Position numbers and translations under genes: made by a program
In this document: piece after piece, positions 3,200 through 63,690 of the stretch
Position numbering within the stretch: the stretch's first letter is position 1
Layout: each line of letters starts with the position of its first letter
The notes under the pieces: generated by a model
The model's input: the letters and a program-made list of their open reading frames with translations, nothing else
The model's database searches: none
Told to the model about the DNA's origin: nothing
Virus record (IMG/VR): IMGVR_UViG_3300046005_000547
Coordinates: 170,736-234,735 of that record
Direction: 5' to 3' (one strand)
Length of the DNA: 64,000 nucleotides

Positions 3200-3862
3200 T
3201 TATTTGTGTGCAATTAAAACAAATCTTCTACCTTTACTGTTTGGTAACCAAATCTTATCGTCAGCCAAATTCTTTGTATCATAATTGATTACTTTACCAG
3301 AATCATCCTTTATGAAATCATGTTCTATTGTATCATAAACAAATACATTTAATGAAGGAACTATTGATAACTTCTTCCATAATCTTTTACCGCCTTCATA
3401 TTGAACGTTATCGGAAACAATAACGTATCCATCATCCATCAATGCTTGGTATATAGAAGAAGCTAATCCAAGTCCTTCTAAGTTGGGAACTGTTGCTACA
3501 ATTGATATTTGTAATTGTTTCTTATGTTCCAATTCCGCTGGTAAATTATCAATCAAAGGGTGTTTAAAATGAACTAGACACGCAACATAATATATTTTAG
3601 CTCCGTCTTCTTGCCGTATAGTTGGTATATAAACGCCAGCCATCCCTTTTGTTTTTGTCAATAAAATTGTATAATCACCAATAACACTCGAATTTTTTAC
3701 AGTTTTAATCAAATCAAATCTTCTTTGAACTGTTTCATCTGTTATATATCTACCAGCATCACCTTCGGCCGATATTGTAATCCAAGCAGACTGGTCTTTC
3801 GTTTCTGGTCTATGTTCAGGCATTTCTAATATCATCTTTCTAATTTCTGCAAATGTTTTCAT
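3200..3862 (-). CDS. GNAT-fold protein with capsid-targeting-like N-terminus
   Basis: N-term MKTFAEIRKMILE; VATVPNLEGLGLASSIY...SDNVQYEGGKRLW resembles GNAT motif A; late-promoter-like TTAAATA upstream. Confidence 0.5.
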   Translation of the reverse strand: MKTFAEIRKMILEMPEHRPETKDQSAWITISAEGDAGRYITDETVQRRFDLIKTVKNSSVIGDYTILLTKTKGMAGVYIPTIRQEDGAKIYYVACLVHFKHPLIDNLPAELEHKKQLQISIVATVPNLEGLGLASSIYQALMDDGYVIVSDNVQYEGGKRLWKKLSIVPSLNVFVYDTIEHDFIKDDSGKVINYDTKNLADDKIWLPNSKGRRFVLIAHK

Positions 3863-3905
3863 GTTATATTTCCCCTTTAAATTTTATTATAGATTTATTT
3901 AATCC

Positions 3906-3945
3906 AAAAAGAAACCCGTTAGAGCATTCAATCTCTAACGGGTTT
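3906..3945 (-). terminator. Intrinsic terminator
   Basis: AAACCCGTTAGAG/CTCTAACGGGTTT stem with A-tract on + strand (U-tract on -); near-identical to the one at 17031-17069. Confidence 0.8.
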
Positions 3946-3956
3946 GGTATCACAAT

Positions 3957-4109
3957 CTATTCTTCATCTTCTTCAATATCATCCAATAACGGCGTTCCGC
4001 AAATTGGACAACTTCTAATGTCATTTTCCGAAAAATCCTTTGATTTAATTGTAATAGATCCTTGCGCATCACAATGGTCGCAAGCGAAGTTCTTTTTTAC
4101 TGATGCCAT
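3957..4109 (-). CDS. 50-aa zinc-ribbon protein (not in ORF track)
   Basis: Translated by hand: MASVKKNFACDHCDAQGSITIKSKDFSENDIRSCPICGTPLLDDIEEDEE; CxxC...CPxCG. Confidence 0.7.
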   Translation of the reverse strand: MASVKKNFACDHCDAQGSITIKSKDFSENDIRSCPICGTPLLDDIEEDEE

Positions 4110-4248
4110 TTTAATTCCTTTTAATGTGTTATTGTATATTCATTTAATTGTATTTAATATGAAATTATTCATGTCATTAGATAATTCTTCTATCTTTTTG
4201 AATAATAAATTTTTATTTTTAATTTCAAAATCCCAGATTACCAATACA

Positions 4249-5217
4249 TTATAACCAGACATCACCCCAAGAACCAGTTAATGCACCTTTTGAATAATCC
4301 GTAATTGTAGTTTCAAAGAAATTTCCATGAATTGGCGCATTAATCATTTCGTCAATCCAATTCAATGGGTTTTTCTTAATTTTATAAATTCCTTTCAATC
4401 CCATGGAAATCAATCTTCTATCGCAAAGGTATCTAATGTATTGTTTAATATCACCTGCGGATAAATTTTCCATGTCACCCATACTGAACGACAAATCAAT
4501 GAATTTGTCTTCTAGTTCAACCATTTTTTCTGCGATAGAATATAATTCGGATTTTAATTTATCGTTCCAGATATGTCTATTTTCTTCGATATGAGTTCTA
4601 AACAGTTTAATCATACCTTCGCAATGCATTGATTCATCAACTAAACTCCAAGAAACTAATTGACCCATACCTTTCAATTTACCATGTCTAGGAAAATTTA
4701 ATAACATAGCAAATGATGAGAATAATTGTAATCCTTCTGTGAATGCGCTGAATACTGCAATTTGCTGAGCAATAGTGGTGTTATCCATATGAGTGAATCT
4801 ATCAACATAATCATGTTTTTCTTTCATCTCAGAATATTCATTAAATTCGTTGTATATTCTTTCTGGCATCCCAAGAGTTTCAATTAAATGCGAATATGCA
4901 GCAATATGAATTGATTCTCTTGCAGCAAATCCTAATAACATCATTCTTATTTCTGGTTGAGGGAATGTTGGTAAATAATTTTTAACATATCCTCCAGCAA
5001 CATCGATATCACCTTGAGTGAAGAATCTAAACAAATTTGTTAAAAAATGTTTGCTGGATTCATCTAATTTCGACCAATCTTTAATATCGTCTTGCATAGA
5101 CACTTCAGTGAACATCCAATGACTTTGTTCATGAGTCAACCAATAATCATACGCCCATCCATATCTATGCGGTTTGTAATATGGTCTTTCGTCAGTTAAT
5201 TTTAAATTTTTACTCAT
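4249..5217 (-). CDS. nrdB: Ribonucleotide reductase class Ia beta subunit
   Basis: FFTQGDIDV, RESIHIAAY, EGLQLFSSF, DESMH di-iron motifs; start set at MSKNLK. Confidence 0.97.
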   Translation of the reverse strand: MSKNLKLTDERPYYKPHRYGWAYDYWLTHEQSHWMFTEVSMQDDIKDWSKLDESSKHFLTNLFRFFTQGDIDVAGGYVKNYLPTFPQPEIRMMLLGFAARESIHIAAYSHLIETLGMPERIYNEFNEYSEMKEKHDYVDRFTHMDNTTIAQQIAVFSAFTEGLQLFSSFAMLLNFPRHGKLKGMGQLVSWSLVDESMHCEGMIKLFRTHIEENRHIWNDKLKSELYSIAEKMVELEDKFIDLSFSMGDMENLSAGDIKQYIRYLCDRRLISMGLKGIYKIKKNPLNWIDEMINAPIHGNFFETTITDYSKGALTGSWGDVWL

Positions 5218-5224
5218 TTTATAG

Positions 5225-7021
5225 TTACCCTTCACAAGCCAAACAAGAATTTCCCTCGGCAACAGACATCATATTCATTTCTTCAATAATATGTCGTTGA
5301 ATTTGTTGTGACACTTTATCAGCCTTTCCGACTTTATTAGATCTCAAATAATACAAACTTTTTAATCCGCGTTTCCACGCACTAAAATGGACGGCATGTA
5401 AGTATTTTATATGTGCATCTGGTCTGAAAAATACATTTATAGATTGTCCTTGGTCAATAATAGCTGCTCTATCCGCAGCTAAATCGATAATCCATCTTTG
5501 GTCAATCTCCATAGACGTTTTAAACACATCCTTTTCATCTTGAGATAAAATATCTAAATGTTGAACAGATCCTTCATTTGCAATAACGCTTTTCCAAATA
5601 TCGTCTAATTTTGATTCTGTTAATGATTTATTAGATAATAATTTTTCTAATTGTTTGTTTTTGTAAATTGAAAATCCTGAAAGTGTATCTTGTCTATATG
5701 CATTTGCTCTAAATGGTTCAACACTTGGTGATGTATTTCCGACCAAAATAGACGTAGATGCATTAGGTGCGATTGCCTGCATATGAGCAAATCTTTTACC
5801 ATAACCAATTCCATCTGGACATTCCCCTCGTTCTAATGCCAATTCAGAATTACACTTATCTAAATGAACTTTGATACTTTTAAAGATACGCAAATTTGTA
5901 CTTTTTGCTAATGCGCATTCGAATGGTATATTTTTTTGTTGAAAATAATCGTGTAATCCTAATACACCTATACCAATAGAACGTTCATTCTTTGCGGATT
6001 CAACTGCTCTACGTAATTCTGGCGGAGCATTTTCGATAAAATGGGTTAAAACATTATCCAACATTTCGGCAACATCTCTATGAAATTGATAATCATCTTT
6101 CCATTCATCATAATAATTTAAGTTTAATGACGATAAACAACAAACCGCAGTTCTATCTTCAGAAGTTGCGAGTTCTACCTCTACGCAGAGATTCGAGCCA
6201 TTGATTTTTAAGCCTTTTTTTCTTTGAAATTCTGGTAATGCTCTATTTGCCGTATCAATAAAATGCAAATATGGTTCACCGCGTTGAACTCTAGTTTCAA
6301 TCAATAATTGCCAAACTTCTTTTGCCGAAACAGTTTGTGTTATTTCTTTGGTTGCTGGATCTATTAAATTCCAAGAATCGTCAAAATCTGGTTCAATCAT
6401 ACATTTTTCAATGATTTGCATAAAATCATCTGTTATATTTACACCATGATTCAAATTTGGACATCGGATATTTGGATCTCCAGTCGCCTTTCTCATTTCA
6501 ATAAATGGTATAATTTCAGGATGAGAAATATCCAAGAATGCCGCGTAACTACCTCTTCGAGTAGAACCTTGTTTATACGCTAAAGAAGACGCATCATATG
6601 TTTTTAAATGCGGGATGATTCCAGTTGATTTATCGCCAGCAGAACGAATATCCATATGGATACCAACACCCCCACCTAACATGGATAATGTATTGACTTC
6701 AGATAATGTATCAATAAGGCCCTTTGATGTATCTGGTAAGTAAGACAAAAAACAAGAAATTGGTAATCCTTTTTTATTTCTACCGAATGATAAAATCGGA
6801 GTCGAATAACTCAACCAATGCTTAGATGCATAATCATATAATCTTTGTGAATGTTCTTTATTAGTACCAAACGCATTAGAAACATATGCATATCTTTGCT
6901 GAGGTGATGATTCATCAGACATCATGTACGATTCCTTAAATCGTTTATGTCCTAATTCATCTATCAAATTGTCTCGCGAATAATCAACATTTATTCCTAA
7001 ATACAATTCCGTTATACTCAT
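5225..7021 (-). CDS. nrdA: Ribonucleotide reductase class Ia alpha subunit (short form without ATP-cone)
   Basis: PISCF, SNLCVEV catalytic motif, IAPNASTS, SLYYLR, C-terminal CLACEG. Confidence 0.97.
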   Translation of the reverse strand: MSITELYLGINVDYSRDNLIDELGHKRFKESYMMSDESSPQQRYAYVSNAFGTNKEHSQRLYDYASKHWLSYSTPILSFGRNKKGLPISCFLSYLPDTSKGLIDTLSEVNTLSMLGGGVGIHMDIRSAGDKSTGIIPHLKTYDASSLAYKQGSTRRGSYAAFLDISHPEIIPFIEMRKATGDPNIRCPNLNHGVNITDDFMQIIEKCMIEPDFDDSWNLIDPATKEITQTVSAKEVWQLLIETRVQRGEPYLHFIDTANRALPEFQRKKGLKINGSNLCVEVELATSEDRTAVCCLSSLNLNYYDEWKDDYQFHRDVAEMLDNVLTHFIENAPPELRRAVESAKNERSIGIGVLGLHDYFQQKNIPFECALAKSTNLRIFKSIKVHLDKCNSELALERGECPDGIGYGKRFAHMQAIAPNASTSILVGNTSPSVEPFRANAYRQDTLSGFSIYKNKQLEKLLSNKSLTESKLDDIWKSVIANEGSVQHLDILSQDEKDVFKTSMEIDQRWIIDLAADRAAIIDQGQSINVFFRPDAHIKYLHAVHFSAWKRGLKSLYYLRSNKVGKADKVSQQIQRHIIEEMNMMSVAEGNSCLACEG

Positions 7022-7030
7022 ATAATTTCC

Positions 7031-7240
7031 TTATGGTTTTTCTTTCAAGATAAAAACACCATCTGCCGCGCAGGTCATATATTCATTCATGATATAATCT
7101 TCACAATTGAATACAGTTGCCAAAGATGGAACAATTTTACATATTTCTTGAAATGATGGTTTATGATTGAATTCTGTAATGATTTCAGTTTTAAAATCAT
7201 TACCAGATTCGTTATAGATTTTATGTAATTGATACGTCAT
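7031..7240 (-). CDS. Hypothetical protein
   Basis: Tightly packed ORF with RBS in operon. Confidence 0.6.
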   Translation of the reverse strand: MTYQLHKIYNESGNDFKTEIITEFNHKPSFQEICKIVPSLATVFNCEDYIMNEYMTCAADGVFILKEKP

Positions 7241-7248
7241 GATATAAT

Positions 7249-8488: not shown

Positions 8489-9502
8489 TCAACATTTCCT
8501 CCAAGTGATATATTTCATGAGAGCGGATGCTCCGACGAATGTATTATTATCTATAATACTTTTTGCGTCTATACCATTCAAATACATATCATTGATGTCT
8601 TTTTGTTTTATCTTGGAATCCCAAATACAAACCGAATATCCAAATTTGATACTGTTTTCGAGTAATCTCATTATTTCAATTGCTCTGGGTTCATTATCAT
8701 AAACCAAGACAACATTGTCTTTATGTTCCTTAATGAACACATTACTGTTAAATGACGAACCAGAAACAGCTATACAATTATCTATAAACAATGAATCAAT
8801 TGGACCTTCAACAACGTATATCTTCTTAGAAGTATCAATTCTTTCTAAACCATATACAGGATAATCCGTATCCATCAATTTGATATTAGAATATCTCATG
8901 AAGTTGTTATCAATTGCTCTACCCGTTAATTGGAATATATATCCTTCTGGATTGAAATATGGAATAACAATTCTAGGTGAATCAATTACAGAATCAAACT
9001 TTTCTGGGATGATCGAATTGATTAACTTTTTGTATTCTGTTGTATAATACAATAGTTTCCATTTATCCTCTGGTATATTTCTTCTTGAGAGAAATTCAAT
9101 TGCTTCTTTAGATTCAGATGCTGGAATCAATTGAGATAGAATTTTGTTATTGTAAATTGATGATTCAGAAAATGATGGTTTTGAATCAGGAAGTTCAATT
9201 GTTTTGTTTGCTCTATGTTTATTGATTCCTTGTTTGTATCGTTCGACAACATAATCTGAATATAACAAAGAATTGACTTCTTTTAGGAATGTACCAAACG
9301 ATACAGAATACTGGCAATTGAAACATCTATAGAACATATCATTTTTAACGGTATAGATGAATCCTCTGGCTTTTCTGGTATTCTTTTTTGAATCCCCACA
9401 AATTGGACAACTCATCTTCCATGTTTCTTCATTTATCTTTCTGAAGTTGCGCATGGAAGATGAGAACAAATGGATGTATTTCTTATCGATGTATAATGAC
9501 AT
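8489..9502 (-). CDS. 61: T4 gp61-like DNA primase
   Basis: CPICGDS...ARG...FYRCFNC zinc-binding domain; YVVEGPIDSLF TOPRIM motif; DNEPR; KDINDM. Confidence 0.96.
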   Translation of the reverse strand: MSLYIDKKYIHLFSSSMRNFRKINEETWKMSCPICGDSKKNTRKARGFIYTVKNDMFYRCFNCQYSVSFGTFLKEVNSLLYSDYVVERYKQGINKHRANKTIELPDSKPSFSESSIYNNKILSQLIPASESKEAIEFLSRRNIPEDKWKLLYYTTEYKKLINSIIPEKFDSVIDSPRIVIPYFNPEGYIFQLTGRAIDNNFMRYSNIKLMDTDYPVYGLERIDTSKKIYVVEGPIDSLFIDNCIAVSGSSFNSNVFIKEHKDNVVLVYDNEPRAIEIMRLLENSIKFGYSVCIWDSKIKQKDINDMYLNGIDAKSIIDNNTFVGASALMKYITWRKC

Positions 9503-11763: not shown

Positions 11764-12633
11764 TTACACCACAGTCAACGTTGCAGCTGTTGTTAATTTA
11801 GGTGTAGCATTTGTTGCCGTCACATTACACGTATACTTTTTACCATTCAAACCAGTTGTATTTGAAATGGTCAATGTCGCGGTCGTTGTGCCGGTATAAA
11901 CACCCACGTTTGTTAAATCAACGCCATCGACTTTCCATTGGTAACTTAATGTACCACCACCAGCCGAAATTGTAGCAGTCGTCGCAAATGTTGTTCCAGC
12001 AGGAGCAGTAATTGTTCTATTTGTTGGAGCAGACGCTGAAATTACAAATGGATCTTTCATTCGCAATTCGCCAAATTTAGTAGTCACAGTATCAGCATTA
12101 GCTGCAGTTACAATACAACGATATTTCTTACCAATCAAACCAGTCGTAGAAGAAATAGATAACGTATTTGTCGTCGCTCCTAAATAAACACCAGTATTGG
12201 ATACGTTGGCGAATGTTTTATTCGAAGCAGAAACTTGCCATTGGTAACTTAATGCACCACCACCAACCGAAATAGTCGCTGTTGTTGAAACGGTTGCTGC
12301 AGTTCCTTCGAAGATTACACTTGATGCTGGATCTGTAGCTGAAATTACATAAGTTTGAGTCGCAGTTAAATTGGCATCCACTGCTCTGGTGACACCAATT
12401 GAATATCCAGAATTCGATGCTGGATTTAACAATTCAGCTTTATGTCGAGTTGTTCCAGCGGAATCTTTATACGTAAAGTATTTCCAATATCCTGAACATG
12501 TAATCCCTTTCAATTTAGTGTCTGGATCGTCAGCTTCCGCTTGAGATACAAAAATTACATTTCTTCTATCATCTTCCGATAGAAATGACGGTAAATTGGT
12601 TTCCGTATCTGTTCCAAATTTCCATGTACCCAT
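11764..12633 (-). CDS. Hoc-like virion decoration protein with two Ig-like domains
   Basis: Duplicated LSYQW...GVY.G.TT.TL.IS.TTGL.GKKY.C.VTA; TATAAATA late promoter upstream. Confidence 0.75.
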   Translation of the reverse strand: MGTWKFGTDTETNLPSFLSEDDRRNVIFVSQAEADDPDTKLKGITCSGYWKYFTYKDSAGTTRHKAELLNPASNSGYSIGVTRAVDANLTATQTYVISATDPASSVIFEGTAATVSTTATISVGGGALSYQWQVSASNKTFANVSNTGVYLGATTNTLSISSTTGLIGKKYRCIVTAANADTVTTKFGELRMKDPFVISASAPTNRTITAPAGTTFATTATISAGGGTLSYQWKVDGVDLTNVGVYTGTTTATLTISNTTGLNGKKYTCNVTATNATPKLTTAATLTVV

Positions 12634-12688: not shown

Positions 12689-13621
12689 CTAACGATGCGC
12701 AGATAATCTCGCAGATTCAATTTTCTTGATTTTTGGTAACAATTTATTTGCCAATTTTGTGATAGTTGCTCGTTTCTTCTGAACCATCTTTTCCAATCTT
12801 TCTTTTTCAGGAATCGATAATGTATTCAGAGGTTTCTTAGCCATTTTTGTTTTAAACGCAATAATGGCAGCATGTCTTGCTCTGGAAGCAATTTTAGCTG
12901 GAGATGATTTTGTATGTAATGCCAATTTCATTTTAGCGGTTCGTTTCGATTGAGATTGATGAAATTTAACAGCCATTTTCAATCGAGCCATTCTACTTAA
13001 CATTTCATCAAGACGTTCCACAGATTCATTAGTTGGTACATAAGGATCTACAATACCTGGATGAATATACCCCATATGATTATCTTCATCATCAACAATA
13101 TGTAATTCATCGTCGTCATATACATCCATACCAATTAAATCTTCTAAATCTCCGATACTGTCGTAAATATCATCAACAACATCATCGTTAATTCCAATTA
13201 AATTCCCGAAAATATCTTCTGTTGTTGTATCGTCTTCTAAATCATATTCTAATTCTTCAACTTTACCGTCATTGTCGATATCTCCATCAATCTTACCATC
13301 TTTATTCTTATCTTGTAAATGATCTGGAATATCATCATCATTGAAATCTGTATAAGATTTTCTTGGTACATTATATAATGAATCCATTGTACCACTAGAT
13401 GTGGCTTCATTTACTCGTTTTCTTAATTCTTTGAATGTTTGCATTGGTTTAACCGATTCTGATACTGTTGAAATAATGACATTCGATGCCGTCTTTTTAA
13501 GAGCATCGGGGATTGTCTTGTCGTCTTTTAATCTTACCATCATTTTCTTCTTAAAATCTTTATCTTTTGGATTTAAGTCAAATGTATCGGCAAGCATCTG
13601 TAATAATTGTTCGTCTTTCAT
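12689..13621 (-). CDS. Putative head-associated protein: acidic middle, basic helical C-terminal domain, internal protease-site motifs
   Basis: ESVKPMQTFKELRKRVNE/A; DKNKDGKIDGDIDNDGK; basic C-terminal region; CATAAATA upstream (13647-13654). Confidence 0.55.
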   Translation of the reverse strand: MKDEQLLQMLADTFDLNPKDKDFKKKMMVRLKDDKTIPDALKKTASNVIISTVSESVKPMQTFKELRKRVNEATSSGTMDSLYNVPRKSYTDFNDDDIPDHLQDKNKDGKIDGDIDNDGKVEELEYDLEDDTTTEDIFGNLIGINDDVVDDIYDSIGDLEDLIGMDVYDDDELHIVDDEDNHMGYIHPGIVDPYVPTNESVERLDEMLSRMARLKMAVKFHQSQSKRTAKMKLALHTKSSPAKIASRARHAAIIAFKTKMAKKPLNTLSIPEKERLEKMVQKKRATITKLANKLLPKIKKIESARLSAHR

Positions 13622-17073: not shown

Positions 17074-18540
17074 TCATGAAATTTTGTAGAACACAGAACT
17101 AAAATGATTTTGTTTCTTAGAGGATAAACATAACATCTTTAATGTTTCTCTCATGTTAGTTTGTTCTAAACAATATAAGAAATGTAATAACACAAGACAT
17201 CTTTTAATTGTATATTGATTATCAGGTTCTTCAGTTTCCAACGTTTGAATGTCAATGAATACAAATTTATCGTTCTTTACATAATCAACAAATCCTGAAT
17301 ACTTTGAATCAATCGAATCCAATGTTTTCAATACATTAGATTCAGGAACTAATTGATAATCAACGTAATCCTTGAATTCAGGAATAATGAAATCAGTCAA
17401 TTTGTTAATCAATGCCTTAGAACTGCTACCGTCCCAATTAGATTTGTTGAAATCGGCAGAACCTTGACAATATACATTCAGGTCGTTACTCTTACCTCTT
17501 GGTGCCAATCTGAACATGTATTCGTAATCTTTACCAAATTCTTCCATGATACAATACATATTGATGTAAGATAACATATCATTGAATTTGAAAATCTTTA
17601 ATGGTCTATCATACCATAAATTATCAACATAATTGTAATCAACTTCGACTTTCTCTACCTTAGCAAATTCATTCAATGTTGATTCAGAAACTAATCCTGT
17701 TGTTGGAGCAATGACTTTCTTCAGGGAGAAACCAATCAATTGTCTTGTGTCAAACAGATGTTTAATGGTATCATTCAGGTCATATACATCTGCTCGTCCT
17801 GTTTCAATTCTGTATAGAACTTCCGAGAGGGTATCAATGACATTTTGTTTATGATGTTTGTTGATTGCCCATACATCAGATGGATTCCAATTATCTTTCG
17901 AGTCTGGTAGATATTTGGATTGAGTCATTGTAGTCAGAATTGGTAATTTATTCTTATCGGAATCTCTATAGAATTCATAAGAATGAATATCAATCACTCT
18001 ACTGACAGCATTATATGTTTCTTTGAATGATAAGAACCATGTGTCGTCAAATTCAAACCCGATTGTCTTATTGATTTGAGATTTGGTAGGATATTCAGGA
18101 AATGAGTTTAAAATGTAAGTGATAGCTTCTTCATGTTGATATGAACTTGGTCTATTATTTACAGTTTCATTACCATCTTCATCAACCACTCTTTTGAATC
18201 CACCTCCAGATTTATAGAATGTAAATGATACTCCACCGGTATGGAATTTAATGGCATTCTTGTCTTCTGAGATATGTTCAATACCAATATGCGAGATAGC
18301 ATCATACATTCGTTTGATGGATTGAAAATCATCTACAATGGAGAAATGGATGTTGTTTGTGATTTTATTATCGATTATCTTTAGATGCAATTTAGATGCA
18401 TAAGGTTGTAATGCATTCAACAATGTATTTATATGAGAATTGTTTTGAAATTGTTGACGTATTACTTCGAACGCAGATTTACCTAATCTATAATGGGTTG
18501 CTTCCTGTATTGTGTTGTTATACTGTTTAAAAGATAGCAT
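17074..18540 (-). CDS. PD-(D/E)xK restriction-like endonuclease with capsid-targeting-like N-terminus
   Basis: MLSFKQYNNTIQE/A; QHEEAI ... DNWNPSDVWAI ... LIGFSLKK (D...SLK variant active site). Confidence 0.55.
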   Translation of the reverse strand: MLSFKQYNNTIQEATHYRLGKSAFEVIRQQFQNNSHINTLLNALQPYASKLHLKIIDNKITNNIHFSIVDDFQSIKRMYDAISHIGIEHISEDKNAIKFHTGGVSFTFYKSGGGFKRVVDEDGNETVNNRPSSYQHEEAITYILNSFPEYPTKSQINKTIGFEFDDTWFLSFKETYNAVSRVIDIHSYEFYRDSDKNKLPILTTMTQSKYLPDSKDNWNPSDVWAINKHHKQNVIDTLSEVLYRIETGRADVYDLNDTIKHLFDTRQLIGFSLKKVIAPTTGLVSESTLNEFAKVEKVEVDYNYVDNLWYDRPLKIFKFNDMLSYINMYCIMEEFGKDYEYMFRLAPRGKSNDLNVYCQGSADFNKSNWDGSSSKALINKLTDFIIPEFKDYVDYQLVPESNVLKTLDSIDSKYSGFVDYVKNDKFVFIDIQTLETEEPDNQYTIKRCLVLLHFLYCLEQTNMRETLKMLCLSSKKQNHFSSVFYKIS

Positions 18541-42202: not shown

Positions 42203-42814
42203 TTACAACAATTTATCTGTAATCAACATACGTTTCATCTTATGTCTATCAGTTTTACCCCAAATATCTTTATTTTTCTTTTTGAACATTTCCCATTCGT
42301 GTAAATTATCAATCTTCTCCAATTCTTTGGTTAAAAAATCAAAATAATATACGTTCAATCCTTTATTAAACGCCTTACCGATACAACGTTCCCAAAATCG
42401 TTTACCATCAAATGTTTGAATAGAATCCGTTAAAATTGTATGGTGTCGTTTCAATAAAATTTCAAAAAACATTTTAGCCGCAACACCTTCGATATAATTG
42501 TAAACTGGATTTATCCAAACTCCAGATTGCCAAACGAAATCTCCAAGTTCTATACAACTACCCAATTTATATGTCATATCGTATGTAATCAATTCTTCTT
42601 CAATATCTAATACAAAGAAATTATCTCTCCATTCGTACATATTTGAATTTGCCGATAAATTAAACGCCAATTTCTTTCTTTGTTCTTTATACAATTCCAG
42701 ATAATTTTCTCTATTTTTATCTGCATCTATTAATTCTTCTGGATCCCAACTTTTCATAATCTTTGGCATTTCCATCAACATTTTATTGTATTCTCCAAAT
42801 CTCAACATCTTCAT
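42203..42814 (-). CDS. GNAT-fold protein with capsid-targeting-like N-terminus
   Basis: MLRFGEYNKMLME/M; GVAAKMFF...ILTDSIQTFDGKRFW. Confidence 0.5.
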   Translation of the reverse strand: MKMLRFGEYNKMLMEMPKIMKSWDPEELIDADKNRENYLELYKEQRKKLAFNLSANSNMYEWRDNFFVLDIEEELITYDMTYKLGSCIELGDFVWQSGVWINPVYNYIEGVAAKMFFEILLKRHHTILTDSIQTFDGKRFWERCIGKAFNKGLNVYYFDFLTKELEKIDNLHEWEMFKKKNKDIWGKTDRHKMKRMLITDKLL

Positions 42815-46100: not shown

Positions 46101-46430
46101 ATGCATATAACAAGTAAGCCGATAAACGATTTATATAATCATTATAAGAATTCAGCAGCGTCCCGATCTATCCCATTTACATTAACCAAATTGGATTTCC
46201 ACGAATTGTCCTTTCCATTGACATGCCCTATTTTGGGTATGCCGTTGAGATTTAATACAGGAAGAACGATGTCAGATGATTCTTATTCATTGGACAGGAT
46301 AGATTCAAGTTTGGGATATACAAAGGAGAATTGTATAGTGATATCAAATAGAGCAAATATCTTGAAGAGAGATGCTACATTGGATGAACTTCAGAAATTG
46401 TGTAAATTTTATACAGAGTTGTTGAATTAG
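46101..46430 (+). CDS. His-Me finger (HNH/EndoVII-like) endonuclease
   Basis: CPILG...SLDRIDSSLGYTKENCIVISNRANILK. Confidence 0.8.
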   Translation: MHITSKPINDLYNHYKNSAASRSIPFTLTKLDFHELSFPLTCPILGMPLRFNTGRTMSDDSYSLDRIDSSLGYTKENCIVISNRANILKRDATLDELQKLCKFYTELLN

Positions 46431-47221
46431 GTTTTAAAGATGGTTAATCCAAAGATTGTGGAAGTTGAATCTTCATCGTCTAATATGGATTTTAGGTCAA
46501 CAACATCTTTGATTAAGGAATTCAGGGTGGTACCAGAAGCGATAAGGTCATCTAGGACTAATACAGTGGAGTTCCTTAGTTTGCCAATTTTGGGATCGTC
46601 TTTTAATTTGTAGAAGTTTTGGAGGAATTTGGTGTCGCGTTTATTGAAGTCTTTCATTTGGAAAGAGTCTTTATCATTTGCTCGTTTTAGACCATATTCT
46701 AGCGACCTGATGATGCTGGGAGAAATCTTAGGATGATTTTTGTCTATTTCAATTTTAGAGATTTCATTTTTGACATATAATTTTGGGACAAACGAGATAT
46801 GCGGATTCCTTGATTTCAATTCAACAATTAGGTCATCTAGGATGGAGGATGTTGAATCAGGAGTGATGATTACATCTACCAGCTGATGGTCATTAGATTT
46901 GGTTAAGATTTTGTACGAGATATAGATTGCGGTTCTCCTGATGAAATTTGTATAATCATCAGGAGATAGATTTTGTTGTTTCTTTAATTGTTTGATTACA
47001 GAAGTGACATCCACATATTCATCTTTTGTGGTCTTGTAGATAGAATAAATTGGAACGCCATTTACATTGGAACCTTTTGATACATACGGGTCGAACGATT
47101 TAGTCTTACCAAATTTAGTGGATATGCCTTGTTTGTCGGAGTAGTTGAATTGTAGACCAGAGTCAGTTTGTTTGATTGCTTCTAGCAATTCATTGTATTC
47201 TTTAAAAGATAGCATTCTCAT
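46427..47221 (-). CDS. Type I phosphoribosyltransferase-fold (ComF-like) protein with capsid-targeting-like N-terminus
   Basis: MLSFKEYNELLE/A; VLVLDDLIASGTTL PRPP-binding loop; IITPDST. Confidence 0.75.
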   Translation of the reverse strand: MRMLSFKEYNELLEAIKQTDSGLQFNYSDKQGISTKFGKTKSFDPYVSKGSNVNGVPIYSIYKTTKDEYVDVTSVIKQLKKQQNLSPDDYTNFIRRTAIYISYKILTKSNDHQLVDVIITPDSTSSILDDLIVELKSRNPHISFVPKLYVKNEISKIEIDKNHPKISPSIIRSLEYGLKRANDKDSFQMKDFNKRDTKFLQNFYKLKDDPKIGKLRNSTVLVLDDLIASGTTLNSLIKDVVDLKSILDDEDSTSTIFGLTIFKT

Positions 47222-59629: not shown

Positions 59630-62431
59630 ATGAAAACCTTCACTGACATACGCAAACAAATCAACGAGAACAGTCTTTATACTTCTCAACAAGAGAAAGA
59701 CGACTTCCTGAAAGATAAAAAGAAAATTGTAACTGCATTCTTATACTCTTTCATCGGTAATCTATCTCTTTACAATAAAGACTCTGCCAAAGCAAAACAT
59801 TATTTCTTATCGGATAAGAAATTACAGATTGTCAACATCAATGACGATAACAATGATGCGTCTTTAATTCTGAAAATCATGCATGATGAACATGGATTCA
59901 AGAATACAAACACTGCCAATGAGATGACTAAATTATTGGCAAAATTGAAAGTCTCGGATGTATCATCATTCGATGATGCAATTATCAGAGCATGGTTGTC
60001 GGATCTATCTCCTGCGTTCCATTCCGCTATCCCAACGGATTTGAAAAAGACTGTCGATGATTACATGAATAGTGTCACCAGTTTCGATAGATTGAGTTAC
60101 AAATTGTATAAACATAAGACTGCTTATGGTGACGGAGAGTATCTTGATTTGGCAAAGAAAGTTGGTCGAATCGAAAGACATACACATAAACCGAAAGTCG
60201 TAGTGACTCCAACTGCATCTGCCGTTCCACCTACATTAGCAAATCCTCAGATATTTGTTCCTACCGTTAATACATCGACTGCTGTTGTTACAACTCCACC
60301 GGATGTTATAGATGAACCTATTCAAATTGTTGAGAAAGAACCAGAAGTTAAACAATTCAATCAAGAATTGTATGACAAATTTAAAGTTAAAAATTTATTG
60401 AGTGATGATGAATGGGATGAATTGATTGAGGATAAAGAAGTTTTCGTTAAAATAATGATTGAATCTCCGAAACGATTATATACAACCCAATACCATAAAA
60501 TTAGAAAAGTTATGTTCAAAGAATTATCGGAAGAACAACTCATGGAAATGAAGAAAGTCTCCTGGAATTTAGATGTATTTAAATATGATATCAAAGATTC
60601 AATCATGATTCTGAAAGATAGAAATATGGATTTCGTTAAGATTTTTGGACCTTTACGAGTTGCGCAATATATGTGCGACAAAGATATTTCCGCGGGTAAA
60701 GAAATCATTGATTTTTATACTGAACAAAAGATCTTAATTTCAACTGATAATGGTAATCGTATTGTAAAGGATTTTCCAGAAATCTTAGTGGATGCAGTTA
60801 AATTGACAATCAAAGACATGGGAGTCGATTATGGTAGCTCGATGGCTGTTCATTTAAATCAACAACAAATTGATGAAATTTATGATGTTAATGATAGATT
60901 ACTTGTATTACGAAATGTTGTATTGACTGGTAGATTGATAAAGGATCCAGTTGATTTATTGAAGAAATTCAATTACAATGAAGTTTTAATCAAAGCTGGT
61001 TTAGAAAATACAAGTGTGCCTCATTTCACGCCGTATCTAAATTCAATGAATAAATTGTTCATGGAAGATATGGATAAATGGTATCCATGGGAACGAAAAT
61101 ATAGTTACATTAAACAATTATTCACCAAACCAAATGTAATTGATTATTTCAATGATAAATTTAAAAGAGCATTTACGGATGATGGTGTATTTGAATACTT
61201 CGACGACAAAGAACGATTAGATGGTATTTCATCATCATTGTTTGATTTGTTAGTATCCAATTATAAAACCAAACCGGAACTTGTTGATTCTATCTTCAAT
61301 GATTTTGGTGATAAGATTAAAACAAGAGTCAAAAAGAATTTCAACTCGACATTCAGAGTGATGCATGATTTAAAAGATAGCGCATTACCAATCAAAGAAG
61401 AACTAGATGCCAAATCTATTCAAGCTATCTTGGAATTCAATGACATCGACCTTAGTGTAATTTCTGGCACCAAAATGAAATTCTCTAAGAACAAATCGTT
61501 AAGTCAAACAATCAATGATTTTGTTAAAGATGAATCTGTTACCACTATTGAACCATTGAAAATTGTTGATTTGAAAACATCTGATGCAGATAACAAGAAG
61601 TTATCTCAGAAGATTGTTGATGAAACGCATTCTGGTGGTAAACATGGGGACATCTATCCATTAGTCTTACGTCAATTTGAAGTTCATCTACCAGATGATA
61701 AATTCCAAGAGTTCAAAAAATTGATGATTCAGAATAATTCACATAAAGAGATTGTTCCTGCTTTCCATGGCACTGGTTCTATTGCAGCTAATATGATTCT
61801 TAGATATGGATTTAAAGTGTTACCAGAACAAAGTAATTCTGCTATTGGTATACAAGGTAGAATGTTAGGTGATGGTATTTACTTTGGTACCAATATCGAC
61901 AAAGTATTACAATATGTTGGTAATAAAGGAATGACCAGAAGACTTGGTACAACTGGATATGTATTTGAAATGGAGAACGAACTTGGGGTAAAAGGTAATG
62001 ATTACAAAGAAGCTGGGTTGGGTAATGATAAAATTGCTTCGCCAGAATGGGTTGTATTTGATGCCAACAGACAATTAAAAATTATTAAGGCGTATGAAGT
62101 GAAATTGGTAGATAAATCAGAATTAGATAAATCATTAAATGAATCAGTCAAACCAAGAATGATGTCATTCAAAGAATATGTTGATATCAAGAAGAACAAT
62201 TATACATCATACAATTTCTATGACAGAAATGTAATTACGCCTGATGGCAAAGTAATCAAATCGACTGATGTAACAGACACTACATTTAAGAAAGGTATTA
62301 GAGTTGAAATCAGAGGAAGAATTACATCAGTGATTATTCCAACGAAACAATTAGAATTCAATGATGTATTGAGTTGTTATGATTTACAGGATAAACAATT
62401 AGACAAGTATCTTCGTCTATTGAATAAATAA
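59630..62431 (+). CDS. Large PARP-like (H-Y-E) ADP-ribosyltransferase, probable injected head protein (functional analogue of T4 Alt)
   Basis: N-term MKTFTDIRKQINE; catalytic motifs AFHGT, GRMLGDGIYF, SPEWVVF; (TAAA)n late-promoter-like tract and AAGGA RBS upstream. Confidence 0.8.
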   Translation: MKTFTDIRKQINENSLYTSQQEKDDFLKDKKKIVTAFLYSFIGNLSLYNKDSAKAKHYFLSDKKLQIVNINDDNNDASLILKIMHDEHGFKNTNTANEMTKLLAKLKVSDVSSFDDAIIRAWLSDLSPAFHSAIPTDLKKTVDDYMNSVTSFDRLSYKLYKHKTAYGDGEYLDLAKKVGRIERHTHKPKVVVTPTASAVPPTLANPQIFVPTVNTSTAVVTTPPDVIDEPIQIVEKEPEVKQFNQELYDKFKVKNLLSDDEWDELIEDKEVFVKIMIESPKRLYTTQYHKIRKVMFKELSEEQLMEMKKVSWNLDVFKYDIKDSIMILKDRNMDFVKIFGPLRVAQYMCDKDISAGKEIIDFYTEQKILISTDNGNRIVKDFPEILVDAVKLTIKDMGVDYGSSMAVHLNQQQIDEIYDVNDRLLVLRNVVLTGRLIKDPVDLLKKFNYNEVLIKAGLENTSVPHFTPYLNSMNKLFMEDMDKWYPWERKYSYIKQLFTKPNVIDYFNDKFKRAFTDDGVFEYFDDKERLDGISSSLFDLLVSNYKTKPELVDSIFNDFGDKIKTRVKKNFNSTFRVMHDLKDSALPIKEELDAKSIQAILEFNDIDLSVISGTKMKFSKNKSLSQTINDFVKDESVTTIEPLKIVDLKTSDADNKKLSQKIVDETHSGGKHGDIYPLVLRQFEVHLPDDKFQEFKKLMIQNNSHKEIVPAFHGTGSIAANMILRYGFKVLPEQSNSAIGIQGRMLGDGIYFGTNIDKVLQYVGNKGMTRRLGTTGYVFEMENELGVKGNDYKEAGLGNDKIASPEWVVFDANRQLKIIKAYEVKLVDKSELDKSLNESVKPRMMSFKEYVDIKKNNYTSYNFYDRNVITPDGKVIKSTDVTDTTFKKGIRVEIRGRITSVIIPTKQLEFNDVLSCYDLQDKQLDKYLRLLNK

Positions 62432-62470
62432 TGAAAGAATCCCAGACATGTTAAAGTGTCTGGGATTTTT
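62432..62470. terminator. Intrinsic terminator
   Basis: AATCCCAGACA/TGTCTGGGATT followed by TTT. Confidence 0.85.
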
Positions 62471-62471
62471 A

Positions 62472-62645
62472 ATGGAAATTTGTTGTTTTAAGATGGAATA
62501 ATAACATCCTGTAGAGTTTATTGACATATAATGGAAACGAACAACTAGAGTCCATTAACGAACAAATAATGGATGTTTTAATATTGATTTGTGGTCAGAA
62601 TATTGTATCCAATAAAAATCCCAGTCAACTTCGGTCTTCTGGGAT
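62472..62645. repeat. Partial cassette: inverted-repeat element H9 plus the array-type terminator
   Basis: Core TCCTGTAGAGTTTATTGACA at 62507-62526; AATAAAAATCCCAG..CTTCGG..CTGGGAT at about 62611-62645. Confidence 0.85.
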
Positions 62646-62652
62646 AATATAT

Positions 62653-62955
62653 TTAGATAGATGCGATGGAACCTTTGATGATACCAATACCATGTTTTTC
62701 TAAAAATTCGGAAGGTAAATCTTGTACATGGACGATAATACCTTCTTCTCTATGGTTGAATGCACCTTTACCAGAATTTGGACTATCGACAATTTTAGCA
62801 TCAGTGATAAACAATTTAATGTAATCAGTGCCTTTGGCTGACATTTTGATTTTGAAATTTACAGGGCGACCGTCTGCGTCAACGTAAATTTGTTCACCGC
62901 TTGATGATTTAGCTTCTTCCATAACCATCGCTTGGAATTCTTTAAATGTACTCAT
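62653..62955 (-). CDS. Putative internal head protein (T4 IP-like)
   Basis: MSTFKEFQAMVME/E N-terminus; own early promoter TTTCGA-N16-TATAAT at 62987-63014. Confidence 0.55.
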   Translation of the reverse strand: MSTFKEFQAMVMEEAKSSSGEQIYVDADGRPVNFKIKMSAKGTDYIKLFITDAKIVDSPNSGKGAFNHREEGIIVHVQDLPSEFLEKHGIGIIKGSIASI

Positions 62956-63028
62956 GTTTGTTCCTTTTAATTTTAAATTAGAATCAATTATAATGATTTC
63001 GCATTATATCGAAAGACTTTAATTATAT

Positions 63029-63223
63029 TTAGTCTTTCCAATCAATCCTTAGATTGTTCTTTGTAAAGAACTTCACAACGGATGAACTAATTACATTTCT
63101 GAAACATTGATGTAATTTAAAATTAGGTATCTTAACGCCGATATTACGAGTTATCCATTCAGATACATCTTTCTCAACGTAATTAATCAATTCTCTAATC
63201 TCATGGTCTTTTAAACCATTCAT
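63029..63223 (-). CDS. Hypothetical protein
   Basis: ATGA overlap with upstream gene. Confidence 0.6.
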   Translation of the reverse strand: MNGLKDHEIRELINYVEKDVSEWITRNIGVKIPNFKLHQCFRNVISSSVVKFFTKNNLRIDWKD

Positions 63224-63690
63224 GATTCTTTAATCGGTTCAATACTGAATGAATCGAATGTCAATTTATTTCCTTGTAATTGTTTAGTTAATTCTTCGAT
63301 CTTCTGAATATCTTCATCACTTGGTTTATACTTAATCGATAAATGTGGGATGTATTCAGGATAAGAATGTTTGTATCCTAGATTACTCAATACATTATGT
63401 TGAGCAATCAAATCAGGAGATTCTAATGTCAATGTAACGGCACCCCATGTAGAACCTTTCTCACCAAGTAATTTACATCCAGCGATAATACCAACAAATT
63501 TATCATGTAATGATTCAACTTTGTATGCGGGATTAGATACATCATACATTAATGTTACATGTAAATCCTCGATGATGTCTTCAATTCCATTATCATTGAA
63601 GAAACCTCTGATACGTTTGGAATCCTCTTCCGATAATTTAACAGATACGTATCCACCATTATATTGTTTCCATTGTTCAAATGTTAACAT
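63220..63690 (-). CDS. 2H phosphoesterase, T4 gp57B/Acb1-like anti-CBASS nuclease
   Basis: GYVSVKLS; DLHVTLMY (HxT); YKHSYPEYIPHLSIKY (HxS). Confidence 0.8.
   Translation of the reverse strand: MLTFEQWKQYNGGYVSVKLSEEDSKRIRGFFNDNGIEDIIEDLHVTLMYDVSNPAYKVESLHDKFVGIIAGCKLLGEKGSTWGAVTLTLESPDLIAQHNVLSNLGYKHSYPEYIPHLSIKYKPSDEDIQKIEELTKQLQGNKLTFDSFSIEPIKES

What the first reader, a model, noticed from the sequence alone, without database searches (positions are those of the whole stretch)
3200..63690. A genome-wide family of T4-like capsid-targeting sequences marks an injected enzyme payload
Seen: N-termini MKTFAEIRKMILE (3862-), MLSFKQYNNTIQE (18540-), MLRFGEYNKMLME (42814-), MLSFKEYNELLE (47221-), MKTFTDIRKQINE (59630+) and MSTFKEFQAMVME (62955-), with a weaker MLTFEQW (63690-). 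Established: T4 internal proteins use a 10-residue CTS (MKTYQEFIAE) that prohead protease gp21 removes after Glu in (I/L)-x-E. Inference: a GNAT pair, a restriction-like nuclease, a PRTase, a PARP-like ART and an IP-like protein are packaged and injected with the DNA. A packaged PRTase and nuclease would be an unusual payload.
Basis: partly seen in the sequence, partly recalled or inferred. Interest (0 to 1): 0.7.

Follow-up and report, generated by a model that had tools for sequence, protein, structure and literature searches.

The report
Capsid-targeting leaders tag a phage's packaged proteins
About fifteen otherwise unrelated genes of this uncultured T4-like phage begin with the same 12-13-residue leader, a longer version of the T4 "capsid targeting sequence". 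This most likely means the proteins, several of them enzymes, are loaded into the head and injected with the DNA.

Summary
All seven N-termini are present (two start 6 nt from the stated coordinate). The motif M-x-[TS]-F-x-[EQ]-aromatic-x3-[ILV]-x-E occurs at 12 or more gene starts against 0.19 expected.

The genome is a complete 234.7-kb T4-type phage with a gp21-type prohead protease and a gp23 capsid protein. A genome-wide scan finds 13 N-terminal leaders, one internal copy and one longer variant. The proteins behind them are mutually unrelated.

In three protein families the leader is a variable-length or absent add-on. It ends exactly where the conserved mature domain begins, after Glu.

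Related marine T4-like contigs and cultured cyanophages carry the T4-length (10-aa) version on kinases, cytidylyltransferases and a SAM hydrolase. In cyanophage S-CREM2 every gene start with the leader encodes a protein found by mass spectrometry in purified virions.

So the capsid-targeting reading is well supported by inference but not shown for this phage.

- **Cargo confirmed:** three GNAT-like proteins, a PRTase and an H-Y-E PARP-like ADP-ribosyltransferase.
- **Cargo not confirmed:** the "restriction-like nuclease" has no fold support, and the weak seventh member is Acb1 with no cleavage Glu.

This is a new variant of a known mechanism.

The parts
3200..3862 (-). 220-aa GNAT-fold protein. 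Leader MKTFAEIRKMILE is encoded at 3824-3862. A TAAATAA late-promoter-like motif lies 39 nt upstream (about 3895-3901).
   Evidence: (Atlas structure matches to GNAT clusters, TM 0.5-0.79, alignments start at residue 15).
12689..13621 (-). 310-aa protein of unknown function. The leader-like motif MQTFKELRKRVNE is internal (aa 60-72, nt 13406-13444). The true start is 13621, with a ribosome-binding site and TAAATAA 31 nt upstream. The next gene downstream (11764-12633) is a Hoc-like head protein.
   Evidence: (the 59-aa N-extension and the internal motif are conserved in a relative that is 84% identical in the neighbouring 488-aa protein).
17074..18540 (-). 488-aa protein of a family found in marine T4-like phages, function unknown. 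Leader MLSFKQYNNTIQE is encoded at 18502-18540.
   Evidence: leader is an indel ahead of the conserved xT.Y.xG..GF start; AF2 pLDDT 84.9, only residues 1-13 below 50.
42203..42808 (-). 201-aa paralogue of the 220-aa GNAT-like protein. Leader MLRFGEYNKMLME is encoded at 42770-42808.
   Evidence: (BLASTP E 6e-5 to the 220-aa protein).
46427..47215 (-). 262-aa type-I phosphoribosyltransferase-fold protein. The 12-aa leader MLSFKEYNELLE is encoded at 47180-47215.
   Evidence: PF00156, below cut-off; TM 0.75 to a PRTase cluster; VLVLDDLIASGTT PRPP loop.
59630..62431 (+). 933-aa protein with a C-terminal PARP-like (H-Y-E) ADP-ribosyltransferase domain. Leader MKTFTDIRKQINE is encoded at 59630-59668. 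Repeated ATAAATAA motifs lie 26-34 nt upstream.
62653..62955 (-). 100-aa small protein, one of six small proteins sharing the leader class MS[TA]F[KE][EQ]F[KQ]xxVME. Leader encoded at 62917-62955.
63220..63690 (-). Acb1 (anti-CBASS phosphodiesterase). Its 11-residue N-terminal extension matches only leader positions 1-9 and has no cleavage Glu, so it is a doubtful member.
   Evidence: 14.9 bits.
63691..64000 (-). 3' part of a 175-aa gene. Its 5' end (leader MLSFNEWRELNE) lies across the 127-bp terminal overlap at genome 345, outside the window.

Best explanation
The shared N-terminus is a capsid targeting sequence (CTS) of the T4 type, one helical turn longer than T4's (12-13 residues against 10).

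Proposed mechanism: late in infection the tagged proteins bind the scaffolding core of the prohead through the leader. Phe4, the aromatic or aliphatic residue 7 and the hydrophobic residue 11 would lie on one face of a short helix. The capsid shell closes around them. The gp21-type prohead protease then cuts after the Glu of [ILV]-x-E, and the mature proteins stay in the head. They would be ejected with the DNA, so they can act before any phage gene is expressed.

Predicted payload: a PARP-like ADP-ribosyltransferase, three GNAT-like proteins, a PRTase, a 488-aa protein of a family found in marine T4-like phages, two proteins of unknown function and six small IP-like proteins.

Shown here: the motif, its restriction to gene starts, its modularity, the presence of the protease, and the late-promoter association for about half the genes.

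Inferred from T4 and from cyanophage virion proteomes: packaging, cleavage and injection.
For: 1. T4-type head machinery is present: a Peptidase_S77 protease (114 bits), gp23 (470 bits), and gp22, gp67 and gp68-like genes. The gp23 propeptide has a candidate L-Q-E|A site.

2. In T4 the CTS is MKTYQEFIAE. Residues 4 and 7 determine targeting and residues 8 and 10 determine processing. Here residue 4 is always Phe, residue 7 is F/Y/W/I/L, and the leader ends in [ILVN]-x-E.

3. The motif is enriched roughly 60-fold at gene starts, and profile scores separate cleanly.

4. The mature parts are unrelated by BLASTP, apart from one paralogous pair and one weak local match between the ART and a small protein.

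5. Selection acts on the protein, not the DNA: 35% of positions with the same amino acid use different codons.

6. The leader is modular.
   - Homologues of the 488-aa protein carry leaders of 13, 16, 10, 12, 18 or 0 residues, always ending where the conserved domain starts.
   - The AF2 model is confident everywhere except residues 1-13.
   - The PRTase family behaves the same way: 31 of 138 representatives have aromatic residues at positions 4 and 7 against a 1.4% background, and the commonest leader length is 10.
   - The MAIAxGDW paralogue family occurs with and without a leader within this genome.

7. 58 distinct leader-bearing gene starts, clustered, were found in 80 related IMG/VR loci. 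They sit on Zeta/AAA_33 kinases, cytidylyltransferases and DUF6267 proteins.

8. There is experimental cross-validation in cultured relatives. In S-CREM2 the annotated starts with the leader are gp6, gp14, gp154 and gp155, and more loosely gp13 and gp136. All are among the 52 of 219 proteins detected in CsCl-purified virions. By hand calculation p is about 0.003 for 4 of 4 and about 1.5e-4 for 6 of 6. The cyanophage cytidylyltransferase T4-GC190 was detected in S-SM1 virions, and its P-SSM4 orthologue starts MKKFSAFLKE.

9. TAAATAA marks late genes: it precedes the tail sheath, tail tube, gp48, gp22 and Hoc-like genes. It lies 15-90 nt upstream of 6 of 14 leader genes against 30 of 381 others (Fisher p = 7e-4).
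Against: - There is no virion proteome, N-terminal sequencing or transcript timing for this uncultured phage.
- About half of the leader genes lack a recognisable late-promoter motif.
- The leader is 2-3 residues longer than T4's, and several use Val or Asn at the P3 position.
- One copy is internal, 59 residues from the N-terminus.
- The protease-peptide complex prediction gave no answer.
- The S-CREM2 authors caution that abundant non-structural proteins could co-purify with virions.
- My regular expressions were shaped after seeing the data, so the S-CREM2 test is partly post hoc.
- Some small acidic members could be scaffold-core components that are degraded rather than injected.
Confidence: 0.75

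Rival explanations
1. The shared 5' ends are recombination cassettes. Conserved DNA at the start of accessory genes would promote shuffling of gene bodies, and the encoded peptide would have no targeting role.
For: Some leaders are nearly identical at the DNA level, including the upstream ribosome-binding region: 72144+ and 233690- differ at 2 of 42 nt. Close relatives differ in which leader genes they carry. An 'ESVKP(R)M' junction precedes the leader-like motif inside two unrelated proteins. T-even IP loci are described as hypervariable apart from a conserved CTS.
Against: 35% of positions with the same amino acid use different codons, and mean nucleotide identity is only 62%. The amino-acid pattern (Phe4, aromatic 7, hydrophobic-x-Glu) persists across distant phages with unrelated DNA. 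Proteins carrying the leader are found in virions. This explanation is compatible with the CTS reading rather than exclusive of it.
Confidence: 0.1
2. The leader targets proteins to the prohead core, but they are assembly or scaffold components that are degraded and expelled (like T4 gp67, gp68 and gp22) rather than an injected payload.
For: Three of the small members lie in the late structural block (65248+, 67471+, 72144+). Some are very small and acidic, for example 152208- at 54 aa and pI 4.4. T4 core proteins are also gp21 substrates.
Against: The large cargo proteins are folded enzymes with intact catalytic motifs: ART H-Y-E, the PRTase PRPP loop, and the GNAT acetyl-CoA motif in the 122-aa member. 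An enzyme has no obvious role as scaffold. Enzymes with equivalent leaders persist in mature cyanophage virions. In T4, CTS proteins are cut once and retained.
Confidence: 0.1
3. The motif is a translation-initiation or N-terminal stability feature of AT-rich, highly expressed phage genes, or a membrane- or protease-adaptor tag, unrelated to the capsid.
For: The codons are AT-rich (AAA, TTT, GAA), and MK/MS starts are common in phage genes. No direct binding evidence was obtained.
Against: Only about 15 of 437 genes have it. The spacing of Phe4, aromatic 7 and the terminal Glu matches the experimentally mapped T4 determinants. The leader boundary coincides with the start of the conserved domains, and homologues function without it. 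The motif predicts virion association in S-CREM2.
Confidence: 0.05

Closest known systems
[quoted passage not shown]
   Same: An N-terminal leader directly after Met, aromatic residues at positions 4 and 7, and a hydrophobic-x-Glu end cut by the gp21 protease. It is attached to mutually unrelated, fast-evolving cargo, and the phage encodes a gp21 homologue.
   Different: The leader is 12-13 residues, not 10. There are about 15 tagged genes dispersed round the genome rather than three. Much of the cargo is large enzymes rather than small basic proteins. No sequence similarity of the cargo to the T4 IPs was seen or tested.
T4 Alt, the packaged and injected ADP-ribosyltransferase
   Same: A large ADP-ribosyltransferase that would be carried in the head and processed by the prohead protease. 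The 933-aa protein is its functional analogue.
   Different: The domain here matches PARP/tankyrase-type H-Y-E enzymes. From my own knowledge, Alt belongs to the R-S-E type. Alt has a 7-residue propeptide and C-terminal processing, whereas here there is a 13-residue IP-type leader.
Virion-associated 'non-structural' enzymes of T4-like cyanophages: S-CREM2 SAM hydrolase, APH/ChoK kinase and cytidylyltransferase; the NMNAT-like protein T4-GC190 of S-SM1, S-SCSM1 and S-CBWM1
   Same: These phages have the nearest capsid proteins (64% identity). Their virion enzymes start with the 10-residue form of the same leader, and they were found in virions by mass spectrometry.
   Different: The cargo set differs: no cytidylyltransferase or kinase with a leader was found here. 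The papers I read do not connect these proteins to a CTS and leave open whether they are contaminants.
Ejection proteins of giant phages (phiKZ, SPN3US) with propeptides cut by a gp21-like protease
   Same: Head-internal proteins are targeted by N-terminal propeptides that are removed after Glu.
   Different: Those propeptides are mostly over 100 residues and follow another sequence logo. The capsid and scaffold systems are much more divergent.

Membership tests
T4-type capsid targeting sequence (CTS) propeptide | Located at the extreme N-terminus of the precursor | tested here: met
   13 members start with the motif at a Met preceded by a spaced GGA-type ribosome-binding site. One further copy is internal.
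T4-type capsid targeting sequence (CTS) propeptide | Targeting determinants: aromatic or hydrophobic residues at positions 4 and 7 (T4 Tyr4, Phe7) | tested here: met
   Phe4 is invariant and position 7 is F/Y/W/I/L in all members.
T4-type capsid targeting sequence (CTS) propeptide | Ends in the gp21 cleavage motif (I/L)-x-E | tested here: met
   ILE, IQE, LME, LLE, INE, LIE, LNE, VNE and VME (five times). Val or Asn at the P3 or P2 positions is a relaxation of the T4 motif. Acb1 and 153753- lack the Glu.
T4-type capsid targeting sequence (CTS) propeptide | Length of about 10 residues, with the cleavage motif at positions 8-10 | tested here: not met
   Leaders here are 12 residues (three genes) or 13 residues (eleven), with the cleavage motif at 10-12 or 11-13. 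Relatives carry 10-, 12-, 13-, 15- and 16-residue forms on the same cargo. T4 IP propeptides range from 10 to 19 residues.
T4-type capsid targeting sequence (CTS) propeptide | The genome encodes a gp21-type prohead protease and a gp22-type scaffold | tested here: met
   PF03420, 114 bits. A gp22-like 306-aa coiled-coil gene lies between the protease and gp23, recognised by position and composition only.
T4-type capsid targeting sequence (CTS) propeptide | Attached to unrelated cargo: a transferable module | tested here: met
   All-against-all BLASTP of the mature parts. Leader presence, absence and length variation within three families.
T4-type capsid targeting sequence (CTS) propeptide | Precursor incorporated into the prohead core, leader removed, mature protein retained in the virion | not testable with these tools
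   Only indirect evidence: proteins with equivalent leaders are detected in S-CREM2 and S-SM1 virions. The complex prediction gave no answer.
T4-type capsid targeting sequence (CTS) propeptide | Expressed late, when proheads assemble | tested here: inconclusive
   TAAATAA lies upstream of 6-7 of the 14-15 leader genes against 8% of other genes. The motif marks structural genes. The remaining leader genes have no recognisable late motif, and no transcript data exist.
PARP-like (H-Y-E) ADP-ribosyltransferase (933-aa protein) | His, Tyr and Glu catalytic triad in PARP-domain order | tested here: met
   FHGT and GIYF align to the tankyrase His and Tyr. PEWVVF follows at the expected distance (read by eye). 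The Pfam PARP hit, E 4e-5, is below the curated cut-off. Phage homologues are annotated as ART or PARP.
Type I phosphoribosyltransferase (262-aa protein) | PRPP-binding loop (four hydrophobic residues, D-D, x3, S/T-G-x-T) on a PRTase fold | tested here: met
   VLVLDDLIASGTT at aa 218-230. PF00156 scores 21.3 bits, below the cut-off of 26.3. Atlas structure TM 0.75 to a PF00156 cluster.
GNAT acetyltransferase (220-aa and 201-aa pair) | GNAT fold with an acetyl-CoA-binding Q/R-x-x-G-x-G/A motif | tested here: inconclusive
   Fold matches to GNAT clusters at TM 0.5-0.79 and pair homology at E 6e-5. There is no Pfam hit, and only approximate motifs (RCIGKA; LEGLGLA) were seen. The separate 122-aa member at genome 60990 passes the Pfam GNAT cut-offs and has RNQGLG.
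Restriction-endonuclease-like (PD-(D/E)xK) nuclease (488-aa protein) | Recognisable nuclease fold or profile match | tested here: not met
   No Pfam hit. A profile against PDB sequences found nothing. No Foldseek PDB match at E <= 0.001 (best 0.012), with TM no higher than 0.15. The best VIA Z of 6.4 is to the nucleotidyltransferase fold, N-domain only, within the noise range. AFDB and BFVD return only uncharacterised cyanophage and marine proteins. The Atlas lead to RE_HpaII, 0.83, is in the range the tool calls chance.

The most novel reading that the evidence does not exclude
The leader is a sequence-readable address label that holds across environmental T4-like phages, including cyanophages. 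If so, the injected proteome of uncultured phages could be listed from sequence alone.

Read that way, this phage pre-loads a multi-enzyme arsenal: a PARP-like ART, three GNATs, a PRTase, possibly Acb1, and a set of small inhibitors. These would act on host defence or metabolism before transcription starts.

The same label would settle the open question of whether the NMNAT-like enzymes, kinases and SAM hydrolase found in cyanophage virion proteomes are truly packaged.
Probability: 0.55. Interest if true: 0.7.

Novelty: new variant of a known kind. Interest (0 to 1): 0.55.

Why it matters
Proteins injected with phage DNA act before any phage gene is expressed. They are therefore prime candidates for first-strike anti-defence and host-takeover factors, as IPI* and Alt are in T4.

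A leader that can be read from sequence would turn "which proteins are injected?" into a genome-annotation problem for the very abundant marine T4-like phages. It gives concrete candidates here: an ART, GNATs and a PRTase. It also explains puzzling enzymes in published cyanophage virion proteomes.

This phage also appears to hypermodify its DNA, since it encodes Tet/JBP dioxygenases and an amino-acid:DNA transferase. That is the situation in which T4 relies on an injected inhibitor of modification-dependent restriction.

Tried and rejected
- **TATAAATA as the late promoter.** Only 11 copies in the genome and no association with leader genes. Replaced by TAAATAA after k-mer enrichment upstream of plus-strand genes.
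- **Megablast of the ART gene and tblastn of the 488-aa protein against GenBank phages.** No match.
- **Single-protein search for related loci.** Returned only identical contigs; the alignment-based scan worked.
- **Nuclease reading of the 488-aa protein.** Tested with Pfam, PHROGs, a PDB profile, an AF2 model, Foldseek against PDB, AFDB and BFVD, and VIA-align. No support.
- **Complex prediction of the gp21 homologue with the first 30 residues of the 488-aa protein.** The verdict was 'no answer', so it is not evidence either way.
- **The start at 13444 for gene 12689-13621.** Rejected in favour of 13621, which has a ribosome-binding site, a late motif and an N-extension conserved in a relative.
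- **8901- (TerD) and 931-.** Treated as unlikely members.
- **Word-indexed homologue search for the PRTase.** Found only one relative; the exhaustive search found 170.
- **Not done:** a positive-control scan of the T4 genome itself; structure models of the ART, GNATs or small proteins; any host assignment.

Full report
**What the window is**

The window is bases 170,736-234,735 of a 234,735-bp IMG/VR virus record at 31.5% G+C. The 127-bp terminal repeat is an assembly overlap, so the record is a complete, circularly closed sequence.

It is a T4-type phage.
- A Peptidase_S77 (gp21) prohead protease lies at genome 50384-50821.
- A gp23 major capsid protein lies at 52159-53259.
- They sit in the canonical order portal, small core proteins, protease, scaffold, capsid protein.
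- The capsid protein is about 64% identical to those of T4-like cyanophages and Methylophilales phage Melnitz, so this is a distant 'marine' T4 relative of unknown host.

**Checking the observation**

All seven quoted N-termini are present. A properly spaced GGA-type ribosome-binding site points to 42808 and 47215 as the true starts, which makes the motif the exact N-terminus.

On a crude set of 437 called genes, a loose core pattern occurs 30 times in 70,384 non-N-terminal positions. That predicts 0.19 N-terminal occurrences, and 12 were seen.

I built a profile from the leaders and scored it on all 4,718 possible start codons with an ORF of at least 40 aa.
- All 14 sequences the profile was built from score 19.6-27.2 bits. 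Thirteen are N-terminal gene starts and one is internal. This is circular, since the profile was built from them.
- Four non-seed gene starts score 13-20 bits.
- Nothing else scores above 7.8 bits.

Extra members lie at genome 60990+, 65248+, 67471+, 72144+, 136900-, 152208- and 345-. The last of these crosses the terminal overlap, and its 3' end is window 63691-64000. There is also a longer variant at 19285-.

The window gene 12689-13621 carries the motif internally at residues 60-72. Its upstream start has a ribosome-binding site and a late-promoter motif, and the 59-residue extension is conserved in a close relative.

The weak seventh member, MLTFEQW, is Acb1, the anti-CBASS phosphodiesterase. 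Only positions 1-9 resemble the leader and there is no terminal Glu.

**Anatomy of the leader**

The consensus is M-x-[TS]-F-x-[EQD]-[FYWIL]-x-x-x-[ILV]-x-E. Eleven leaders have 13 residues and three have 12.

Three sub-classes are visible:
- MS[TA]F[KE][EQ]F[KQ]xxVME on six small proteins of 47-159 aa.
- ML[SR]Fx[EQ][YW]... on five proteins.
- M[KQ]TFx[ED][IL]RKx[IV]xE on three proteins.

In T4 the CTS is MKTYQEFIAE. Suppressor analysis mapped targeting to residues 4 and 7 and processing to residues 8 and 10. An Asp at position 10 blocks cleavage but not targeting.

The leader here keeps the aromatic residue at 4, the aromatic or aliphatic residue at 7, and the hydrophobic-x-Glu end, but the end is displaced by two or three residues. 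My inference is that positions 4, 7 and 11 would lie on one face of a helix, so the variant is one turn longer.

Codon choice differs at 35% of positions where the amino acid is the same. The constraint is therefore on the peptide rather than the DNA, although some small-protein leaders are nearly identical in DNA and have probably been exchanged recently.

**Is it a module or just paralogy?**

After removing the leader, the mature proteins are unrelated by BLASTP. The exceptions are the 220-aa/201-aa pair (E 6e-5) and a weak 49-residue match between the ART and one small protein.

Three families show the leader as an add-on.

1. The 488-aa protein has 89 homologues. Their conserved domain begins xT-x-Y-x-x-G-x-x-G-F. 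It is preceded by leaders of 13, 16, 10 (MLSFKEFINE, essentially T4-like), 12 or 18 residues, by a different short leader, or by nothing at all (MAKQYFQG...). The boundary always falls at the predicted cleavage Glu. The AF2 model has a mean pLDDT of 84.9, and the only segment below 50 is residues 1-13.

2. The PRTase family has 170 hits at E <= 0.001 in the exhaustive search, of which the best 150 are listed. The same holds there. 31 of 138 full-length representatives have aromatic residues at positions 4 and 7, against a 1.4% background. 26 end in hydrophobic-x-Glu within 18 residues, most often at residue 10. Many others start directly at the conserved G-I-x-I-x-D-G-K-L-x-F-D-Y.

3. A small family starting MAIAxGDW occurs with a leader (genome 19285-, and a 213-aa gene in the relative L099) and without one (window 18634-19230, and a 136-aa gene in L099).

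The ART leader is conserved in three relatives, with changes only at non-determinant positions.

**Related phages**

Scanning 80 IMG/VR loci (823 kb) around homologues of the 488-aa protein found 58 distinct gene starts with M-x-x-F-x-x-[FYW]-...-[ILVM]-x-E. Most have the T4 length of 10 residues, and they are often clustered several to a locus.

Their cargo includes Zeta-toxin/AAA_33 P-loop kinases, cytidylyltransferase-like proteins, DUF6267 and DUF6321. The one long contig I could test has the gp21-type protease.

The cultured cyanophage P-SSM4 has the leader on its 'cytidyltransferase' (T4-GC190, MKKFSAFLKE) and on a neighbouring gene (MLSFKAYLAE).

**Experimental cross-check from the literature**

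Sullivan et al. 2010 detected T4-GC190 in purified S-SM1 virions.

For S-CREM2 a full virion proteome with coordinates is published: 52 of 219 proteins were detected. I fetched the genome and scanned it.

The annotated gene starts that match the leader are:
- gp6, SAM hydrolase (MKDFDSFLEE)
- gp14, APH/ChoK kinase (MKRFDAFLTE)
- gp154, cytidylyltransferase (MKNFSSFLTE)
- gp155 (an 18-residue form)
- gp13 (MKDLHSFLTE) and gp136 (MQTFSMFFSE), with slightly looser criteria

All six are in the virion proteome. By hand calculation the hypergeometric probability is about 0.003 for four of four and about 1.5e-4 for six of six. The other regex hits were internal or antisense positions, not annotated starts.

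The virion 'Cas9-like' gp12 has an internal leader-like LRFASFMAE. This resembles the internal copy in the 310-aa protein here.

The authors of the S-CREM2 and S-SCSM1 papers note the recurrent detection of such enzymes but leave open whether they are contaminants. None of the 15 papers in the library that use the phrase 'capsid targeting sequence' concerns cyanophages. The link appears not to have been drawn in the open literature I could search.

**Timing**

T4's TATAAATA is rare here. TAAATAA is 16-fold enriched upstream of plus-strand genes. It precedes the tail sheath, both tail-tube genes, gp48, the scaffold, a Hoc-like head protein and a UvsW-like helicase, so it behaves as the late promoter.

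It lies 15-90 nt upstream of 6 of 14 leader genes against 30 of 381 others (Fisher p = 7e-4). With the corrected start of the 310-aa gene the count is seven. The remaining leader genes have no recognisable late motif, and there are no transcript data. This feature is suggestive only.

**What the cargo is**

- **933-aa protein.** It has a PARP-type domain. The Pfam hit is below the cut-off. Phage homologues are annotated as ART or PARP. Its FHGT and GIYF align with the tankyrase catalytic His and Tyr, and PEWVVF supplies the Glu. It is a functional analogue of T4 Alt but of a different ART clade; the clade assignment of Alt is from my own knowledge.
- **262-aa protein.** It has the PRTase fold and a canonical PRPP loop.
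- **220-aa protein.** It matches GNAT-fold clusters from residue 15 onward, and the 201-aa protein is its paralogue.
- **122-aa protein at genome 60990.** A third leader protein, and a GNAT by the Pfam cut-offs.
- **488-aa protein.** It has no nuclease signature in any search. The best structural matches are uncharacterised proteins of cyanophages, and the N-domain shows a noise-level resemblance to nucleotidyltransferases. Its function is unknown.
- **The six small proteins, the 310-aa protein and the 175-aa protein.** None has an informative match.

**Conclusion**

The best-supported reading is that these are T4-type capsid targeting propeptides, here in a 12-13-residue variant. They would direct about fifteen proteins into the prohead core, be removed by the gp21 homologue after Glu, and leave the mature proteins to be ejected with the DNA.

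Shown: the motif, its positional specificity, its modularity, the head machinery, and part of the promoter association. Inferred: packaging, cleavage and injection. The inference rests on T4 genetics and on virion proteomes of relatives whose tagged proteins carry the shorter form of the leader.

The main rivals are a recombination cassette only, degraded core components, and a translation or stability tag. Each explains part of the data but not the virion association or the domain-boundary coincidence.

The mechanism is known. The new elements are the length variant, the size and enzymatic nature of the tagged set, and its reach into marine T4-like phages.

Noticed in passing
window 27432-28637 (-), 28768-30138 (-), 32634-33995 (-): An amino-acid:DNA transferase (PF18724) and two Tet/JBP-family 2OG-Fe(II) dioxygenases. 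The phage probably hypermodifies its DNA. That is the setting in which T4 needs an injected inhibitor of modification-dependent restriction.
   Followed up: no
window 63220-63690 (-): Acb1 (anti-CBASS, PF23474, E 1.5e-15) has an 11-residue N-terminal extension, MLTFEQWKQYN, ahead of the Pfam domain. It resembles the leader at positions 1-9 but has no Glu. In T4 a non-cleavable CTS still targets, so an uncleaved, packaged Acb1 is conceivable but untested.
   Followed up: partly
genome 46842-49727 (L004:2843-5728, +): The portal (gp20) ORF is 961 aa, far longer than usual. It has an internal segment beginning with Cys and containing endonuclease-like motifs, so it looks like an intein insertion (read by eye).
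   Followed up: no
genome 53408-55871 (L004:9409-11872, +): Two paralogous ORFs of about 400 aa directly after gp23 share C-terminal ends. They look like homing-endonuclease-type insertions in the structural module. Another homing endonuclease lies at genome 5746-6687 with a TAAATAA motif upstream.
   Followed up: no
window 13445-13462 (-) and window 62143-62163 (+); aa 54-60 of the 310-aa protein and aa 838-845 of the ART: The peptide ESVKP(R)M, with similar DNA, immediately precedes a leader-like M-x-[TS]-F-K-E motif inside two unrelated proteins. It may be a trace of gene fusion with a leader-bearing cassette.
   Followed up: partly
L095-L098 (Synechococcus phage S-CREM2, OR473000): The published 'non-structural' virion proteins gp6, gp13, gp14, gp136, gp154 and gp155 all begin with a T4-like CTS. 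gp12 ('Cas9-like') has one internally at residues 17-25. gp15 starts MNFSEFNESLQNPLFE.
   Followed up: yes
whole genome: TAAATAA occurs only 71 times on both strands of a 31% G+C genome. It is concentrated 28-50 nt upstream of structural genes, so it is a T4-late-promoter-like element shifted relative to TATAAATA.
   Followed up: partly
genome 153753 (-), 108 aa: A gene start MKTFKEFRESVQS scores as high as true leaders (19.6 bits) but has Ser where the cleavage Glu should be. It may be an uncleaved or decayed leader.
   Followed up: no
L099 (249-kb JGI contig, relative that is 84% identical in the 488-aa protein), 13700-14866 and 8564-9205: This close relative carries leader genes absent at the same place in this genome: a 388-aa gene starting MITFKELQNKIDE and a 213-aa gene starting MSTFKEYQAEVLKE. 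The tagged repertoire therefore turns over quickly. A caspase-like Peptidase_C14 gene also lies nearby.
   Followed up: partly
genome 8227-8901 (-); window 4249-7021 (-): A TerD-domain protein (PF02342, E 5e-34), and class I ribonucleotide reductase large and small subunits.
   Followed up: no
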